Counted from the stretch's first letter, positions 37,125-58,337 are shown. The stretch is 64,000 nucleotides of DNA from IMGVR_UViG_3300019458_000020:124001-188000, one strand, 5' to 3'. The notes: generated from the letters alone by a model not told the origin. Made by a program: numbers and translations.

Positions 37125-38207
37125 TCATTGTTTATAATCTACGTTTAAAATTTTGACCGATAGTTGTCTTCCAAGAACAGAAGAATAACGTGGTTTACAC
37201 GGTCGAAGAACGATTCCCTCTCCGTTATTTTTTCCATACTTAAAATTATTAGCAATTTCCTGTAGTCGTGCTACATTCCAAGTTTCATCTAAAATAAAAC
37301 AGTCTCCAATTTGGTCAACTGTTGGAATATCCAATATTGCACAAGTCAACACAATTTGTCCCCAATCGAGCCATGCGCCATTGTCCAAATCACGAATATT
37401 GAATACACGGAATGATTTTTCCGATATTTCCATTTTGTTTCCCTGAATGGTTGGTCCAACGGCCTCGGCCTGAATTGCAATATTTCGATTGAACTTGGTC
37501 AGTTTCTCAACCAAATTTAACTTATTCACGATTGACCAAAACCCCGTTCCTTCTTTTTGTTCTAGTTTTCGGCTACAAACACGAACCTTTCCATCTTGAT
37601 AAATGATAGTACAAGAACTACCATCGGCCTTGCCTGTGATATAACACAAATCGCCACGAAGTTCATTCAATACTTCATCACCATAATTTAATAGATTGTG
37701 TTCATCCGTCATTGGTATAAGATTTGTTGGAAAATTACCTACTGCTTCAGAACTAATTGGTTCTGGCTTTTCGTATTTGATGATACCAAGAATTTCAGTA
37801 ACGTCGTCGCCCTCCTTTAGATTAGCGATGTTTTTTTCAACTTGAAATACCTCATTACCAATTTCTTTTGAATTTTTAAGAAGAATATCACACGGACATA
37901 CCAATCCCTGAGATGGTGCCCCTTTGAATCTACAATTCCAGATCCGATACTTTTGACGTTCCAAAAAAGAAAAAAATGGATTGGTAGAAGGAACAATGGT
38001 GTCAATAGTAATAAAAACAACCAAATCACCTTCTTTGAATTCGCCTTTCTTGATAACGACCGGCCATTCTTTGATTTTGGCTACCTCTAATCTTTCAACC
38101 TCTTTATTAGGATGTGGTTGAATCAAGTGGATTCTTTGAATTGTTGCTAAATTTTTCATTAGATGTATAAAATTTCGTCGGTTTTTACTAAAAAATATTG
38201 ATAACAA
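37125..38207 (-). CDS. RNA ligase, DRB0094 (Rnl2-like) family; start probably MKNLATIQ
   Basis: LATIQRI...PHP..ERLEVAKI..W.VVIKKGEFKEGDLVVF; motif I ITGKADGSS; AEAVG..IQGN; GEGIVLRP; VKILN. Confidence 0.88.
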   Translation of the reverse strand: MLSIFFSKNRRNFIHLMKNLATIQRIHLIQPHPNKEVERLEVAKIKEWPVVIKKGEFKEGDLVVFITIDTIVPSTNPFFSFLERQKYRIWNCRFKGAPSQGLVCPCDILLKNSKEIGNEVFQVEKNIANLKEGDDVTEILGIIKYEKPEPISSEAVGNFPTNLIPMTDEHNLLNYGDEVLNELRGDLCYITGKADGSSCTIIYQDGKVRVCSRKLEQKEGTGFWSIVNKLNLVEKLTKFNRNIAIQAEAVGPTIQGNKMEISEKSFRVFNIRDLDNGAWLDWGQIVLTCAILDIPTVDQIGDCFILDETWNVARLQEIANNFKYGKNNGEGIVLRPCKPRYSSVLGRQLSVKILNVDYKQ

Positions 38208-48204: not shown

Positions 48205-49071
48205 TTATTGAACAAACATTCCACACGATGCTTTAACATCAAATCCAACACGAGGAATAACTTGAACTTTTGTATTAAATAAAAATCTATTTTGAATCAT
48301 TCGAATATTTCGTTCAATGACATTTGCTGAACTTTCTTTTCCCTGTTCTGCTGAAGCTGGATTGTAACGGACCAAATTAAATTCGCAAACAAGGTCATGT
48401 AAATGAATAGCATTACAAATGTTATCAATGTCTTCCTCAGAATCGTTTTCTCCAGCAATAAACGGAAAATGTATTTTCACAACCTTTTTTGAAAAATCTT
48501 GATATTCTCGGAGCATTTCCAATGCTATATATGGTTCCATTGCTGATGGCATCCATTTCTTTCTCCACGCCGGGTTTGTTGAATATAATGAGTAATAAAT
48601 CGTAGGAGTGACATAGTTAAAAATCTTATTCAATGGTTTATTCAATGTCATTGGCATAATAGTTGATACATTGAATTTGGCAGGAAGACCTTCATCTTTA
48701 GCAATCTGACCAAGTTTGGAGAGTAATTCATCTCCATGATTCAAAATGGTGTCGTTTGCTAAAGCTTCACCCCGAGCCATAAAATTATAATGCATGTATT
48801 TAGCAGGTTTCTTTTGCTTTCTGTAATGCTTGAATACTTGAATGGCTTGTGCCATGAAATCATTATGACTGGAATCAACGAAAGAAGTCTGACCCGTTGC
48901 GGTCAAGTGACAGAATGCACACCCTCGATTACATCCGGTTTGAGAAGAAAGATAAGCAATGAAATAATCATCCGTTTTACGGACAAATCTTGATTCAAGA
49001 AACCCAACTAATTGTTCTTCAACAAAATTGACAGAAGAATCTATCTGGGAATTTAATTGATTGATAGTCAT
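48205..49071 (-). CDS. RlmN/Cfr-like radical-SAM RNA methyltransferase lacking the N-terminal domain
   Basis: LSSQTGCNRGCAFC; FMARGEA (cf. MGMGEP); GENDS; NLVRYNP; DVKASCGM (cf. DIxAACGQL). Confidence 0.8.
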   Translation of the reverse strand: MTINQLNSQIDSSVNFVEEQLVGFLESRFVRKTDDYFIAYLSSQTGCNRGCAFCHLTATGQTSFVDSSHNDFMAQAIQVFKHYRKQKKPAKYMHYNFMARGEALANDTILNHGDELLSKLGQIAKDEGLPAKFNVSTIMPMTLNKPLNKIFNYVTPTIYYSLYSTNPAWRKKWMPSAMEPYIALEMLREYQDFSKKVVKIHFPFIAGENDSEEDIDNICNAIHLHDLVCEFNLVRYNPASAEQGKESSANVIERNIRMIQNRFLFNTKVQVIPRVGFDVKASCGMFVQ

Positions 49072-54361: not shown

Positions 54362-54506
54362 CATAAATTTCATTTTCACATCGTATCGTCAGACGATTCA
54401 ATGTGAAAACGTAAAAATCCGTCAAGGCTGCTAGTATTCAGCAATATTAACCAAATACTTGCCTTATTTAAAGTGTCCTACACTCACCTTGAGTTTTACG
54501 TAAAAT

Positions 54507-54580
54507 TGGTAGGAGAGGCCGGTTACGCTCCAGCGCCAAGACTTTGTAAGAGTCCCAATCTACTATTAATATACTCCCCC
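54507..54580 (-). tRNA. trnV: tRNA-Val(TAC), T-loop AGCGTAA
   Basis: GGACT CTTACAA AGTCT; CCA. Confidence 0.8.
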
Positions 54581-54589
54581 ATTGAAAAC

Positions 54590-54654
54590 AAGAATCAGAA
54601 ATGACTCCATATCTCATACGACTATCAGGAACTAAACCTGTTCCACTGATTCTT
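54590..54654 (-). repeat. Repeated structured element, copy A (YGGAA-hairpin-TAGTCGTATGAG-N5-GAGTCAT)
   Basis: Closing stem AAGAATCAG/CTGATTCTT; same core as 56791-56849. Confidence 0.7.
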
Positions 54655-54662
54655 TAACAAAT

Positions 54663-54740
54663 TGGTAGCACCTGACGGATTCGAACCCTCACTATCTAGT
54701 TTCTGAGACTAGCGACTCCTACCAGTTGGTCTAAGGTGCC
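54663..54740 (-). tRNA. trnL: tRNA-Leu(CAG), short variable loop
   Basis: CTAGT CTCAGAA ACTAG ATAGT; CCA. Confidence 0.88.
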
Positions 54741-54747
54741 ATGAAAT

Positions 54748-54832
54748 TGGTAGTCGTGGTCCGATTCGAACGGGCAAAGAATACTACATTTTGAGTGTAG
54801 CGGTTGTTCCAGTTTCCCTTATCCACACGACC
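54748..54832 (-). tRNA. trnL: tRNA-Leu(CAA), enlarged D-loop, 8-nt variable loop
   Basis: CTACA CTCAAAA TGTAG; CCA. Confidence 0.8.
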
Positions 54833-54900
54833 ATAATGTTCAGGATATTGACTATGTACACGAATACGTGAACATGACTGGTTTCCTGAACATGAAAAAT

Positions 54901-54978
54901 TGGTACCTGCAGTGGGATTCGAACCTACACTACACAAATTTTAAGTTTGTTGACTGCTTCCAATTGGTCTATACAGGC
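54901..54978 (-). tRNA. trnL: tRNA-Leu(TAA), short variable loop
   Basis: ACAAA CTTAAAA TTTGT GTAGT; CCA. Confidence 0.88.
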
Positions 54979-54985
54979 ATTAAAT

Positions 54986-55071
54986 TGGTCCCCCATGTAG
55001 GTATCGATCCTACCCTGCCCGTAGGCGTTTGTTTTACAGACAAACCTTCGTCCTTAGAAGTATAATGAGGG
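54986..55071 (-). tRNA. trnY: tRNA-Tyr(GTA), T-loop ATCGATA
   Basis: TTTGT CTGTAAA ACAAA; GCCTACGGGC variable arm; CCA. Confidence 0.85.
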
Positions 55072-55072
55072 G

Positions 55073-55264
55073 TTAACCTCTGCATTTTTTACAGAGAAAT
55101 TGTTTTCCATTAAATTCCATAAAATCTTTTCCATCATGTTCATTAATGATTGGTTTGTAATCATGACAACAATCACATTCTTCAACGAGTGAATAATTGG
55201 CATAATATATGAATTCCGCGTCGGTCAAACCTTCTGCTAATTTTTCGTGTGTGTTTATTATCAT
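55073..55264 (-). CDS. Small Zn-ribbon hypothetical protein
   Basis: CDCC...CKKC. Confidence 0.5.
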   Translation of the reverse strand: MIINTHEKLAEGLTDAEFIYYANYSLVEECDCCHDYKPIINEHDGKDFMEFNGKQFLCKKCRG

Positions 55265-55464
55265 AAATCGGCGCCGTTGAATCTTATTTCAGAATCGTCT
55301 CCTTCTTTTATTATCTATGGATGAGCCACAATCACCACAGACTCACAGACATGGAGCAATAACTATGTCCACCTTACAACGAGCAGTGACGCCCTAATTG
55401 CTATATGCTTACGATTGATTACGTAATACCGTAAAGGCCCAGAAACATAGTCCACGGCATAAAT

Positions 55465-55554
55465 TGGTGCGCCGGGTGGGATTTGAACCCACAGTGGAGG
55501 ATTTCCCTCATTAGGTTAAAAGCCTAATAGTTTCAGCCGTTTACTTACCGACAT
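55465..55554 (-). tRNA. trnK: tRNA-Lys(TTT) with long variable arm
   Basis: TTAGG CTTTTAA CCTAA; GAGG-GAAAT-CCTC extra arm; CCA. Confidence 0.82.
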
Positions 55555-55953
55555 GAAAAAACTGACTGGCCCACAAGATAGCAGGCACTTAGGTTGACTC
55601 ACGAATTGTCTTAACCTGTCTTAGAAATGATAATTACGGGTAAAGGCATTTCACCTTTACATCTTCTCTATTAAATGAAATATGCATCTTCCAAATAACT
55701 TTGATTTACTATCCACCATCATCCGGCGGGACTCGAACCCAGCTGTTATTCCGGCGCAATGCGGAACGGCACTCCCTTAGCCATCGGAGCTTTTAGGATA
55801 ACATGACTCTCTTGCATCACCATCAACACTATCATTTTTTAAATTGGTCAACATCATCACCGCCTGAGAGCATGAACCTTATACGGTCTAAGAGGGTCAC
55901 TGACATGCCTCGAATGTTACTCATACTACTTCTGCCGCAGCTGTTGACTAAAT

Positions 55954-56028
55954 TGGTCAGGTAGATGGGACTTGCACCCATACAGTTTCCTTCACAGGGA
56001 AAGATGCTACTATTACATCACGTACCTG
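55954..56028 (-). tRNA. trnH: tRNA-His(GTG) lacking G-1:C73
   Basis: TTTCC CTGTGAA GGAAA; A73 with T encoded at -1; TGCAAGT T-loop; CCA. Confidence 0.8.
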
Positions 56029-56388
56029 ATTTAAGATAAAAATGATATGGGTCGATACCTGACATGAATCTCCACCATCCTAAGATGGATATTTAATGAG
56101 TGAGTCATTTCTTAGATTACCATATCCTACTCGTAACTGCGTAGTTTATCCTAAAAATACAAGATACCGTTTTGGTTTGTTCATTAGACAAGTTTTTTTG
56201 GTTGCTGTTTGGTATCTTAAATCTTTATAGTTTCAAACCAATAATTTAAATTTTCAATTTCTTTTTTCTTAACTATTAAAAGTTTTTTTGGAAATTGTTT
56301 CCATTTTGCATCATCTTTAGGAGTTTGATACCCCTTTACTTCAATGTATATTTCTAGTAGAGCAAACAATTGATTTTTCTTAGGAATT

Positions 56389-56465
56389 TGGTGGTAGATG
56401 CAGGATTCGAACCTGCTACCTCAATCTTATCAAGATTTTGCTCTACCATGATGAGCTAATCTACC
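56389..56465 (-). tRNA. trnI: tRNA-Ile(GAT)
   Basis: TT-GAT-AA; canonical; CCA. Confidence 0.92.
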
Positions 56466-56601
56466 ATTAAAATTGCCGGTTACTCTCTCCCGGAAGTCAT
56501 ACCACTTTCCTTTGAATCGCCACGGCGACTTTTTTCACCGAATGTTTAGGAACTGACAGCACCCCCGTCACAAACATTGATTGGTTGTAGGTATCACAAA
56601 T

Positions 56602-56676
56602 TGGTGGAGCCACGGGGAATCGAACCCCGATCTATGGATTGCAAATCTACCGTATTACCATTATACAGATGACCCC
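56602..56676 (-). tRNA. trnA: tRNA-Ala(TGC)
   Basis: TT-TGC-AA; G3.U70; CCA. Confidence 0.9.
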
Positions 56677-56710
56677 ATGAAAAATTGGCTGTTCATATAT
56701 GAACAATAAA

Positions 56711-56787
56711 TGGTTGGGTAGGGGAGAATCGAACTCCCGACCTCTACAATGTCAATGTAGCATTCTTCCGTGCTGAACTACCACCCA
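56711..56787 (-). tRNA. trnV: tRNA-Val(GAC)
   Basis: CTACA TTGACAT TGTAG; CCA. Confidence 0.9.
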
Positions 56788-56790
56788 ATA

Positions 56791-56849
56791 AATGACAACA
56801 TGACTCTATCACTCATACGACTAGCGGGAATGAACCCGTTCCGGTCATT
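56791..56849 (-). repeat. Repeated structured element, copy B
   Basis: AATGAC CGGAA CGGG TTCATT CCCG C TAGTCGTATGAG TGATA GAGTCAT GTT GTCATT. Confidence 0.7.
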
Positions 56850-56856
56850 TTTAAAC

Positions 56857-56932
56857 TGGCTCCCTCTGATGGAATCGAACCACCGCTTTCAGGTTCAAAG
56901 CCTGAGTTGCTGCCATTACAAACCAAGAGGGA
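56857..56932 (-). tRNA. trnQ: tRNA-Gln(TTG)
   Basis: TCAGG CTTTGAA CCTGA; CCA. Confidence 0.9.
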
Positions 56933-57100: not shown

Positions 57101-57191
57101 TGGTCGGAGTGGTGGGATTCGAACCCACAAGGTCATAAAAGACGCCGAGTTCCAAGCTCGGGTGGCTACCAAGTTACCTCCCTACACTCTG
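57101..57191 (-). tRNA. trnP: tRNA-Pro(TGG) with long variable arm and enlarged D-loop
   Basis: CCGAG CTTGGAA CTCGG; GTC-TTTTAT-GAC extra arm; CCA. Confidence 0.75.
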
Positions 57192-57198
57192 AAAAATC

Positions 57199-57276
57199 TG
57201 GTCTCCCCGGTCGGATTTGAACCGACATTATTCTTGACCCCAAATCAAGTGCCATACCAAGTTAGGCGACGAAGAG
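57199..57276 (-). tRNA. trnP: tRNA-Pro(TGG)
   Basis: CTTGA TTTGGGG TCAAG; CCA. Confidence 0.8.
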
Positions 57277-57286
57277 AATTAAAAAT

Positions 57287-57447
57287 TGGCTCCAGCATCG
57301 GGACTCGAACCCAAACTAACAGCTATAAGGCCGTCGTGCTGCCTACTAGAAATGCGGAATCTCAACGGTTACTACATCATTTTTATTACGTATTCAAAAC
57401 GCCTTCATCCGTTTACTACACCCGACTAGCAATTACACTATACCGGA
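57287..57447 (-). tRNA. Interrupted tRNA (Asn/Gln-like body) with ~87-nt D-loop insertion and 6-nt anticodon loop
   Basis: TCCGGTA/TGCTGGA-G-CCA acceptor; GTGTAATT[insert]GGCAGCAC; ACGGC CTTATA GCTGT; TTGGG TTCGAGT CCCGA. Confidence 0.65.
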
Positions 57448-58005: not shown

Positions 58006-58093
58006 TGGCTCCAGGAGATGGATTCGAACCACCGGCGGGCTATTCACCTACAGATTAACAGTCTGTCGTCTGCTACCACTCGACTACCCTGGA
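58006..58093 (-). tRNA. trnN: tRNA-Asn(GTT) with long variable region
   Basis: ACAGA CTGTTAA TCTGT; 16-nt extra region; TCC/GGA-G-CCA. Confidence 0.85.
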
Positions 58094-58248: not shown

Positions 58249-58337
58249 TGGTGGTGCCGGTGGGAGTCGAACCCACGGTGGATTATTAATCGTCGGATTA
58301 AAAGTCCGGTGCTTTCGGCCTCTAAGCAAACGACACC
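58249..58337 (-). tRNA. trnK: tRNA-Lys(TTT) with long variable arm
   Basis: CCGGA CTTTTAA TCCGA; GATT-AAT-AATC extra arm; CCA. Confidence 0.85.

What the first reader, a model, noticed from the sequence alone, without database searches (positions are those of the whole stretch)
54590..56849. Undescribed repeated structured RNA motif interspersed among tRNAs
Seen: two full copies (54590-54654, 56791-56849) share a closing stem, YGGAA, a T-loop-like hairpin, TAGTCGTATGAG, N5 and GAGTCAT. They show covariation (CAGG/CCTG versus CGGG/CCCG) and have entirely different but complementary closing stems. Partial cores recur at 55845-55948 (AGTAGTATGAG..GAGGCATG and GACCGTATAAGGTTCATG, inside a GTCAACA/TGTTGAC-CA stem), at 55797-55836 and at 56044-56114. 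Inference: a conserved small-RNA module excised from the polycistron; candidates are a T-arm-first tRNA mimic (Y-RNA/YrlA-like order), a protein-binding processing signal or a small ribozyme. I do not recognise it as a known family.
Basis: partly seen in the sequence, partly recalled or inferred. Interest (0 to 1): 0.68.

Follow-up and report, generated by a model that had tools for sequence, protein, structure and literature searches.

The report
New small RNA in phage tRNA arrays
Two copies of a ~60-nucleotide, three-helix RNA with an almost invariant core sit between tRNA genes of this giant phage; the same RNA recurs in unrelated uncultured phages, matches no known RNA family, and its function is still unknown.

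Summary
The two full copies are real. They read on the minus strand, the sense strand of all tRNAs here, at 54590-54654 and 56790-56850. Pattern scans plus a covariance model found 17 distinct versions in other phage contigs. Three helices are kept by compensatory changes: 98.7% of cells pair, 14 of 18 pairs change on both sides, and 0 of 500 shuffles reach this. The core hardly varies: CGGAAC, a 4-bp hairpin, then CUAGUCGU.

Rfam 15 gives no match. There were no real copies in 185,579 prokaryote genomes or 50,697 GenBank phages, and I found no paper describing it.

Most copies lie tightly between a tRNA CCA end and the next tRNA. One fills the excised segment of a two-piece tmRNA gene. Three distinct versions, in two settings, lie away from tRNAs.

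Best reading (inferred, about 0.4): a stand-alone small RNA cut out by tRNA-processing enzymes, acting through its conserved internal loop and P3 loop. A new self-cleaving ribozyme remains possible (about 0.2). No RNA data exist.

The parts
56790..56850 (-). Motif copy 2, 61 nt. P1 56850-56844 pairs with 56796-56790. P1b (CGG/UCG) 56843-56841 pairs with 56820-56818. The internal loop is AA 56840-56839 opposite CUAG 56824-56821. P2 56838-56835 pairs with 56828-56825, with loop 56834-56829. U is at 56817. P3 56816-56813 pairs with 56803-56800, with loop G-N5-GAG 56812-56804. The junction GUU is 56799-56797.
   Evidence: Covariance models score it 78.4 and 76.3 bits. Exact core pattern. Pair counts.
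54590..54654 (-). Motif copy 1, 65 nt. P1 54654-54646 pairs with 54598-54590. P1b (UGG/UCG) 54645-54643 pairs with 54621-54619. The internal loop is AA 54642-54641 opposite AUAG 54625-54622. P2 54640-54637 pairs with 54629-54626, with loop 54636-54630. P3 54617-54614 pairs with 54604-54601, with loop 54613-54605. The junction UU is 54600-54599. It departs from the consensus at three places: U8, A28, and no G before UU.
   Evidence: Covariance models score it 73.8 and 74.5 bits. In the near-identical contig behind L097, position 34 is A, which turns U8.G34 into U8-A34.
56857..56932 (-). tRNA-Gln(UUG), upstream neighbour of copy 2. Its encoded CCA ends 6 nt before P1.
   Evidence: ARAGORN and Rfam; spacing.
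56711..56787 (-). tRNA-Val(GAC), downstream neighbour of copy 2. It starts 2 nt after P1'.
54663..54740 (-). tRNA-Leu(CAG), upstream neighbour of copy 1. CCA is followed by an A/U-rich linker of about 8 nt before P1.
54510..54580 (-). tRNA called by Rfam only, downstream neighbour of copy 1, about 9 nt after P1'.
   Evidence: Rfam tRNA model, 39.7 bits.
55904..55926 (-). P3-like hairpin (GUAUGAG-N8-GAGGCAUG) inside a 104-nt element (55845-55948) closed by a 7-bp stem. It has sequence kinship to P3 only and lacks the GGAAC/CUAGUCGU core. It may be a decayed or divergent relative.
   Evidence: One of only two hits of the P3 pattern in the genome. No covariance-model hit. Fold z of -0.4. The element is 94.7% identical in L067.

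Best explanation
This is an undescribed family of small phage RNAs, about 60-90 nt long. The fold is a clamp helix P1 of 7-19 bp with any sequence. P1 stacks on a short helix (C8-G34, G9-C33, G10.U32). That helix leads through an invariant asymmetric internal loop (AA opposite N-U-A-G) into a 4-bp hairpin, P2. A second hairpin, P3, branches off beside it and usually carries a G...RGAG loop. This fold is shown. The mechanism is inferred. The RNA is transcribed as part of the tRNA polycistron. RNase P cutting at the next tRNA's 5' end frees its 3' side. Endonucleolytic cutting in the A/U-rich linker after the upstream CCA frees its 5' side. The P1 clamp then protects both ends, so it accumulates as a discrete stable small RNA. 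It acts in trans through the invariant internal loop and the P3 loop, most likely as a docking site for a protein or another RNA. The partner and the biological effect are unknown.
For: The family and fold are real. There are 17 distinct sequences with 98.7% of cells paired and 14 of 18 pairs changed on both sides. None of 500 shuffles reaches this, and slid controls give 25-46%. RNAalifold independently returns the same helices, including 8-34, 9-33 and 10-32. G.U pairs occur on the tRNA-sense strand, so it is an RNA on that strand. In every locus with same-strand tRNAs the motif has the tRNAs' orientation. The gaps measured from the trimmed 7-bp P1 are often only 1-10 nt from the upstream tRNA 3' end and 2-25 nt to the next tRNA, with no fixed spacing; some measured gaps are far larger because ARAGORN misses tRNAs. 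In L074 the motif fills the intervening segment of a permuted two-piece tmRNA gene. That is the one stretch of that precursor which must be excised. Each genome has 1-2 copies among about 22-42 tRNAs, placed mid-array. This looks like a gene, not a general processing signal. The motif also occurs without tRNAs, in G005 and in L080/L125, so its role is not tied to a neighbouring tRNA. There is precedent: ROOL and GOLLD RNAs are phage ncRNAs often encoded near tRNA islands (PMC12286853).
Against: There is no RNA-level evidence. Only two DNA runs from cave metagenomes hold the sequence. Excision, stability and trans action are therefore inferred from anatomy. No candidate partner protein emerged: unrelated carriers share no ORFs, or only multi-copy ORFs whose identity I did not check. 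Strong conservation of junction and internal-loop nucleotides in so small an RNA is equally typical of ribozymes and aptamers.
Confidence: 0.4

Rival explanations
1. It is a new class of small self-cleaving (or otherwise catalytic) RNA. The invariant internal loop and P3 loop form an active site, and cleavage breaks the spacer.
For: About 25 near-invariant nucleotides sit at an internal loop and junction, framed by freely covarying helices. The distribution is sporadic across unrelated phages and contexts, as for twister, pistol and hatchet (my own knowledge). The loop letters GGAA opposite AGUC, in the order helix-loop-helix, recall loop A of the hairpin ribozyme (AGAA/AGUC; recalled, not tested). 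Theta HDV-like ribozymes next to phage tRNAs are a precedent (PMC10879173).
Against: No Rfam ribozyme model matches, even at E<=10 on the motif alone. There is no hammerhead core. There is no upstream partner for an HDV-like P1 and no conserved C in the last junction. There is no loop B equivalent for a hairpin ribozyme. The spacing to tRNA ends varies, so cleavage could not create mature tRNA ends. Cleavage inside the tmRNA spacer would leave a trailer ending in a cyclic phosphate (inference).
Confidence: 0.2
2. It is a cis-acting element for its neighbours: a folding insulator or an RNase recognition site that helps mature the flanking tRNA or tmRNA ends.
For: It sits tightly between a CCA end and the next tRNA 5' end, and in the tmRNA intervening segment. 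Linkers are A/U-rich, and CCA-AUUU recurs after tRNAs in this array.
Against: Only 1-2 of about 40 spacers carry it, and the flanking tRNA identities differ between phages. An insulator would not need an invariant core. Copies exist in a phage with no tRNA at all and after an ORF.
Confidence: 0.15
3. It is a cis-acting transcription element, for example a put-like RNA that binds RNA polymerase for processive antitermination, or some other leader regulator.
For: In G005 it lies in a divergent intergenic leader about 1.1 kb upstream of the terminase large subunit gene. In L080 it lies between two co-oriented ORFs. tRNA arrays are long untranslated transcripts.
Against: It sits mid-array, with 4-25 tRNAs upstream, not at operon starts. 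Its place inside a tmRNA intervening segment is hard to fit. I compared it with no known antitermination RNA.
Confidence: 0.08
4. It is a ligand-binding aptamer (riboswitch).
For: It is a three-helix fold with conserved junction nucleotides. The letters ACGGAA also occur in the glutamine riboswitch consensus.
Against: Most copies have no downstream ORF or expression platform. The glutamine model (RF01739) does not hit it, although it scores 52.8 bits on its positive control in phage Melnitz. The order of elements differs, and my model finds nothing in Melnitz.
Confidence: 0.05
5. It is a tRNA mimic or Y-RNA-like (YrlA) module that works with a Ro60-type protein.
For: It has a tRNA-array context, and P1 is often 7 bp like an acceptor stem.
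Against: There is no T-loop signature, no CCA and no tRNA or YrlA model hit on the motif. No TROVE gene is present in the 250 kb record, which is 74% complete.
Confidence: 0.03

Closest known systems
ROOL and GOLLD RNAs (phage/prophage ncRNAs near tRNA islands)
   Same: Both are phage-encoded structured non-coding RNAs of unknown function that tend to lie in or beside tRNA arrays (PMC12286853).
   Different: Those are 500-800+ nt RNAs that assemble into cages. This one is about 60 nt with three short helices. No Rfam match to either.
Stable 'species 1/2' (RNA C/D) small RNAs of the phage T4 tRNA cluster
   Same: Both are non-tRNA small RNAs co-transcribed and processed with phage tRNAs, with function still unknown. 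This is from my own knowledge and was not tested here.
   Different: Those are larger RNAs with tRNA-like 3' ends. I made no sequence comparison, and no GenBank phage holds this motif.
Hairpin ribozyme, loop A
   Same: The internal loop letters GGAA opposite AGUC lie between two helices in the same strand order as AGAA/AGUC. This is recalled, not tested.
   Different: There are two extra loop nucleotides and only a 2-3 bp 'helix 1'. There is no loop B internal loop with its conserved C and A. The Rfam hairpin model gives no hit.
Sarcin-ricin / loop E (bulged-G) module
   Same: It has GGAAC on one strand and UAGU on the other, letters shared with the eukaryotic sarcin-ricin loop. This is recalled.
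   Different: The strand order is permuted. The A of AGUA that makes the sheared A.G pair is missing. The loop is 2x4 rather than 3x4, so it is not a textbook S-turn.
HDV-like theta ribozymes next to phage tRNAs
   Same: Both are small structured RNAs directly downstream of phage tRNAs (PMC10879173).
   Different: There is no nested double pseudoknot. No upstream complement exists for the 7-nt strand after P2. No Rfam HDV hit.
Glutamine riboswitch (RF01739) beside the two-piece tmRNA of phage Melnitz
   Same: Both are small three-helix RNAs containing ACGGAA, found beside a phage two-piece tmRNA (PMC9004378).
   Different: The order of helices and junctions differs. It lies downstream of the tmRNA, not in its intervening segment. 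The models do not cross-hit.

Membership tests
YrlA / bacterial Y RNA (RF02553) | Match to the family covariance model | tested here: not met
   No YrlA hit on either copy at E<=10. The only YrlA hit in the region is 20.6 bits at 57219-57337, elsewhere. There were zero hits on the motif alone.
YrlA / bacterial Y RNA (RF02553) | tRNA-like module with a T-loop | tested here: not met
   The P2 loop is 6-7 nt, UUYNRUY, with no conserved A at the position-58 equivalent.
YrlA / bacterial Y RNA (RF02553) | Ro60/TROVE partner encoded nearby | tested here: not met
   PF05731 finds nothing in the 250,813-bp record, and the controls ring. The record is only 74% complete.
tRNA / tRNA-like | Cloverleaf recognised by ARAGORN or Rfam tRNA, and a 3' CCA | tested here: not met
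   Neither tool calls the motif. P1' is followed by 2-6 nt and then the next tRNA, with no CCA.
Hammerhead ribozyme | CUGANGA and GAAA cores at a three-way junction | tested here: not met
   The junction letters are CGGAA, CUAGUCGU and GUU. No Rfam hit.
HDV-like / theta ribozyme | P1 formed between the 5' end and the strand after P3, and a catalytic C in J4/2 | tested here: not met
   No consistent upstream complement to UAGUCG in 16 copies. The last junction is GUU, GGU or UU, without a conserved C.
Hairpin ribozyme (RF00173) | Loop A and loop B internal loops, and a match to the family model | tested here: not met
   There is a loop A-like letter resemblance only. P3 carries a hairpin loop without a conserved C, and there is no model hit.
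Glutamine riboswitch (RF01739) | Match to the family model, with the order P1-P2-CGGAAGUA-P3-GAAG | tested here: not met
   No hit on the motif. The positive control in Melnitz scores 52.8 bits, and my model R2 finds nothing there.
Permuted (two-piece) tmRNA (RF04321) | The motif aligns to consensus columns of the family | tested here: not met
   In L074 the motif falls in the insert between acceptor piece and coding piece, not in model positions. In the window only weak hits of 13-20 bits lie elsewhere.
Sarcin-ricin / loop E module | AGUA opposite GAA, flanked by helices | tested here: inconclusive
   The sequence shows AA opposite N-U-A-G, with G10.U32 beside it. The 3D geometry cannot be tested with these tools.
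The new motif itself (working definition) | P1, P1b, P2 and P3 kept by covariation, plus the invariant GGAAC...UAGUC core | tested here: met
Both window copies score 74-78 bits.

The most novel reading that the evidence does not exclude
The motif is a new class of small catalytic RNA, most simply a self-cleaving ribozyme. Its active site would be built from the invariant AA/NUAG internal loop and the G...RGAG loop of P3. It would be embedded in phage tRNA operons and in a two-piece tmRNA precursor.
Probability: 0.2. Interest if true: 0.9.

Novelty: categorically new. Interest (0 to 1): 0.68.

Why it matters
What the non-tRNA RNAs in phage tRNA clusters do is, to my knowledge, a question that goes back to the T4 stable RNAs, and it is still open for ROOL and GOLLD. 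This motif is small, sharply defined and supported by strong covariation. It is shared by unrelated phages from lakes, sediments and a cave. That makes it an easy object for bench work: a 60-nt transcript can be tested for cleavage, probing, pull-down and structure. If it is catalytic, it adds a ribozyme class. If it binds a host or phage protein, it points to a new way phages use their tRNA operons. Its presence in the excised segment of a phage two-piece tmRNA shows that such spacers can carry cargo.

Tried and rejected
- **Near and distant BLAST against 50,697 GenBank phages:** no match.
- **Relaxed 3'-half patterns:** these gave only coding noise.
- **Metagenome scan:** about 45 identical hits came from microbial contigs of human-gut metagenomes, the same sequence as a Blautia contig. 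Together with all 13 prokaryote-genome hits, they lack P1 and P2 complementarity. The representatives I ran through model R2 score at most 26.5 bits. I read them only far enough to class them as noise.
- **Alternative hairpin GGAAC/GUUCC:** the single-sequence minimum-energy fold prefers it. I rejected it because it is broken in L115 and L059, while the competing P2 covaries.
- **Kissing of the P2 and P3 loops, and pairing of GUU with AAC:** no covariation.
- **Partner protein by shared ORFs:** nothing useful.
- **RNA-seq:** no RNA run holds the sequence.
- **Whole-record search of the metagenome contigs behind L097, L115, L074 and L069:** these records are not held.
- **IMG/VR structured-RNA catalogue (PMC10690425):** its supplement is not held, so I could not check whether the motif is listed there under a number.
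- **Literature searches:** none of the seven searches turned up a description of the motif.

Full report
**Setting**

The window is bases 124001-188000 of a 250,813-bp IMG/VR virus record, judged 74% complete. The record has 35.8% G+C. It carries 42 tRNA/tmRNA genes. A near-identical metagenome contig of 340,880 bp exists. The only sequencing runs that hold the DNA are two cave-metagenome DNA runs. Every tRNA in the window lies on the minus strand, so I read the finding on that strand.

**Observation**

On the minus strand both copies read as follows:
- a closing stem P1;
- YGGAA;
- a hairpin CNGG-loop-CCNG;
- N-UAGUCGUAUGAG, N5, GAGUCAU;
- (G)UU;
- the P1 partner strand.

The 24-nt core pattern occurs exactly twice in the window, against 0.02 expected. 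It occurs twice in the whole record. The coordinates are 54590-54654 and 56790-56850.

**Homologues**

I ran exact and degenerate pattern scans of 2.9 million viral contigs, the metagenome collection and 185,579 prokaryote genomes. I followed these with covariance models R1 and R2.
- True copies turned up in seven further viral contigs: L003, L004, L006, L033, L035, L036 and L222.
- About 17 metagenome loci also carry it. They include L059, L067, L069, L074, L080, L125, L115 and the L033-type group.
- Everything else that the patterns pulled in scores at most 26.5 bits and lacks the helices.
- No real copy was found in prokaryote genomes or in GenBank phages.

**Structure**

On 17 distinct sequences, 98.7% of cells form standard pairs and 14 of 18 pairs show changes on both sides. 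None of 500 shuffles reaches these values. Sliding the partners drops pairing to 25-46%.
- **P1:** all seven aligned pairs covary, and its length ranges from 7 to 19 bp.
- **P2:** pair 14-26 appears as A-U, G-C and C-G. L222 turns pair 15-25 into A-U.
- **P3:** all four core pairs covary (AUGA/UCAU, GUGA/UCAC, GCCA/UGGU, CCGG/CCGG and others).
- **P1b:** RNAalifold, run without my structure, returns the same helices. It adds C8-G34, G9-C33 and G10.U32. Pair 8-34 is C-G in 15 sequences and U.G in window copy 1. It is U-A in the near-identical relative, where G34 has become A.

This leaves an invariant 2x4 internal loop, AA opposite N-U-A-G, between P1b and P2. P3 carries a loop that usually reads G...AUR-GAG, and a short (G)UU junction follows.

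G.U pairs lie on the tRNA-sense strand, so the element is an RNA of that strand.

L036 inserts two extra hairpins next to P1 but keeps the P2 arm and P3. The conserved working part is therefore the P2 arm plus P3.

**Context**

In every locus with tRNAs the motif shares their strand. It typically sits a few nucleotides after an encoded CCA, with an A/U-rich linker of 1-9 nt. It then lies 2-6 nt before the next tRNA, with no fixed spacing.

It lies mid-array, with 4-25 tRNAs upstream, at one or two copies per genome. The flanking tRNA species differ between phages.

In L074 it fills the intervening segment of a permuted two-piece tmRNA gene. It sits between the acceptor piece's CCA and the GGGG start of the coding piece. 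The tmRNA_permuted model scores 87.2 bits there, and the motif falls in insert columns.

Three distinct versions, in two settings, lie away from tRNAs.
- L080 and L125 are near-identical loci. The motif lies 6 nt after an ORF stop, and a U-rich run follows P1.
- G005 is a 36-kb phage with no tRNA at all. The motif lies in a divergent intergenic leader about 1.1 kb upstream of the terminase large subunit gene.

The carriers span several unrelated lineages. G000, G001, G002 and G003 share 14-33 ORFs with each other, while G005 shares none with any of them.

**What it is not**

- Rfam 15 gives no family at E<=10, either in the 3.4-kb region or on the motif alone.
- There is no T-loop, no CCA and no TROVE gene, so the tRNA-mimic/YrlA idea fails.
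- There is no hammerhead core.
- There is no upstream partner for an HDV-like P1.
- The glutamine riboswitch model does not hit the motif, although it works on its control in phage Melnitz. My model finds nothing in Melnitz.

Only 55904-55926 is a specific P3-like hairpin. The surrounding regions are not unusually stable and give no covariance-model hit with filters off. In one case the stretch is not conserved in a 94%-identical relative.

**Mechanism**

The shown facts are the fold, the conservation, the placement and the copy number. The rest is inferred.

The placement means RNase P at the downstream tRNA, plus a cut in the A/U-rich linker after the CCA, would release a clamp-closed RNA of about 60-70 nt. 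The tmRNA case and the tRNA-free cases argue that it is cargo with its own role rather than a helper of its neighbours. The low copy number argues against a general processing signal. I rate this stand-alone small-RNA model at 0.4.

The rivals are:
- a new self-cleaving ribozyme, at 0.2;
- a cis processing or insulator element, at 0.15;
- a transcription or leader element, at 0.08;
- an aptamer, at 0.05;
- a tRNA or Y-RNA mimic, at 0.03.

**Novelty**

I found no description in seven literature searches. One large catalogue of unnamed phage RNA candidates, built from IMG/VR, could not be checked. The closest analogues by habit are ROOL and GOLLD, which are often encoded near phage tRNA islands. 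They are unrelated in size and sequence.

The contigs from human-gut metagenomes were microbial and were read only far enough to dismiss them as noise.

Noticed in passing
L074:7379-7659 (-): A phage-like freshwater contig encodes a permuted two-piece tmRNA (87.2 bits). Its intervening segment consists of the motif. tRNAs follow on the same strand.
   Followed up: yes
window 54833-54900 (-): This is another inter-tRNA spacer, lying between tRNA-Leu(UAA) and a tRNA-Leu(CAA). It folds into a very stable clamp-closed hairpin (-21.2 kcal/mol, z -5.4) with two AGUC words. It is not hit by the motif model and may be a different or decayed spacer RNA.
   Followed up: partly
window 54748-54832 (-): This is an 85-nt tRNA-Leu(CAA)-like gene that ARAGORN reports with a 9-nt insert. 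Default ARAGORN and Rfam miss it, and it is found only at a relaxed ARAGORN threshold.
   Followed up: partly
window 54362-54509 (-): This 148-nt spacer has an unusually stable fold (-43.7 kcal/mol, z -4.9 against mononucleotide shuffles). No tRNA call and no Rfam hit.
   Followed up: no
window 55845-55948 (-): This 104-nt element is closed by the 7-bp stem GUCAACA/UGUUGAC. It is 94.7% identical in relative L067. The apparent CCA after it is not conserved there (CCAAUUU versus CGAUUUU), so it is not a tRNA end.
   Followed up: partly
window 55465-55554, 57101-57191, 58006-58093, 58249-58337 (-): Four tRNAs called Lys, Pro, Asn and Lys are 88-91 nt long, unusually long for these types. They may carry inserts or long variable arms.
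   Followed up: no
window 37125-38207 (-) and 48205-49071 (-): ORFs inside the tRNA array hit Pfam families. One is an RNA ligase (PF09414 plus the PHA02142 OB domain). The other is a weak radical-SAM hit, below the family cut-off.
   Followed up: partly
G000:C1:197242-197649 (-), outside the window: ARAGORN calls a tmRNA in the window's own phage genome, about 9 kb beyond the window end.
   Followed up: no
window, after most tRNAs (e.g. 54655-54662, 55950-55957): Many tRNAs here end in an encoded CCA followed by AUUU. This recurring A/U-rich trailer would suit an RNase E-type cut. That is inference only.
   Followed up: no
L097 (contig Ga0187893_10000017, 340,880 bp): A metagenome contig carries both motif copies, with copy 2 identical and copy 1 differing by one compensating base. 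The phage genome is probably about 340 kb rather than the 250 kb of the held record.
   Followed up: partly
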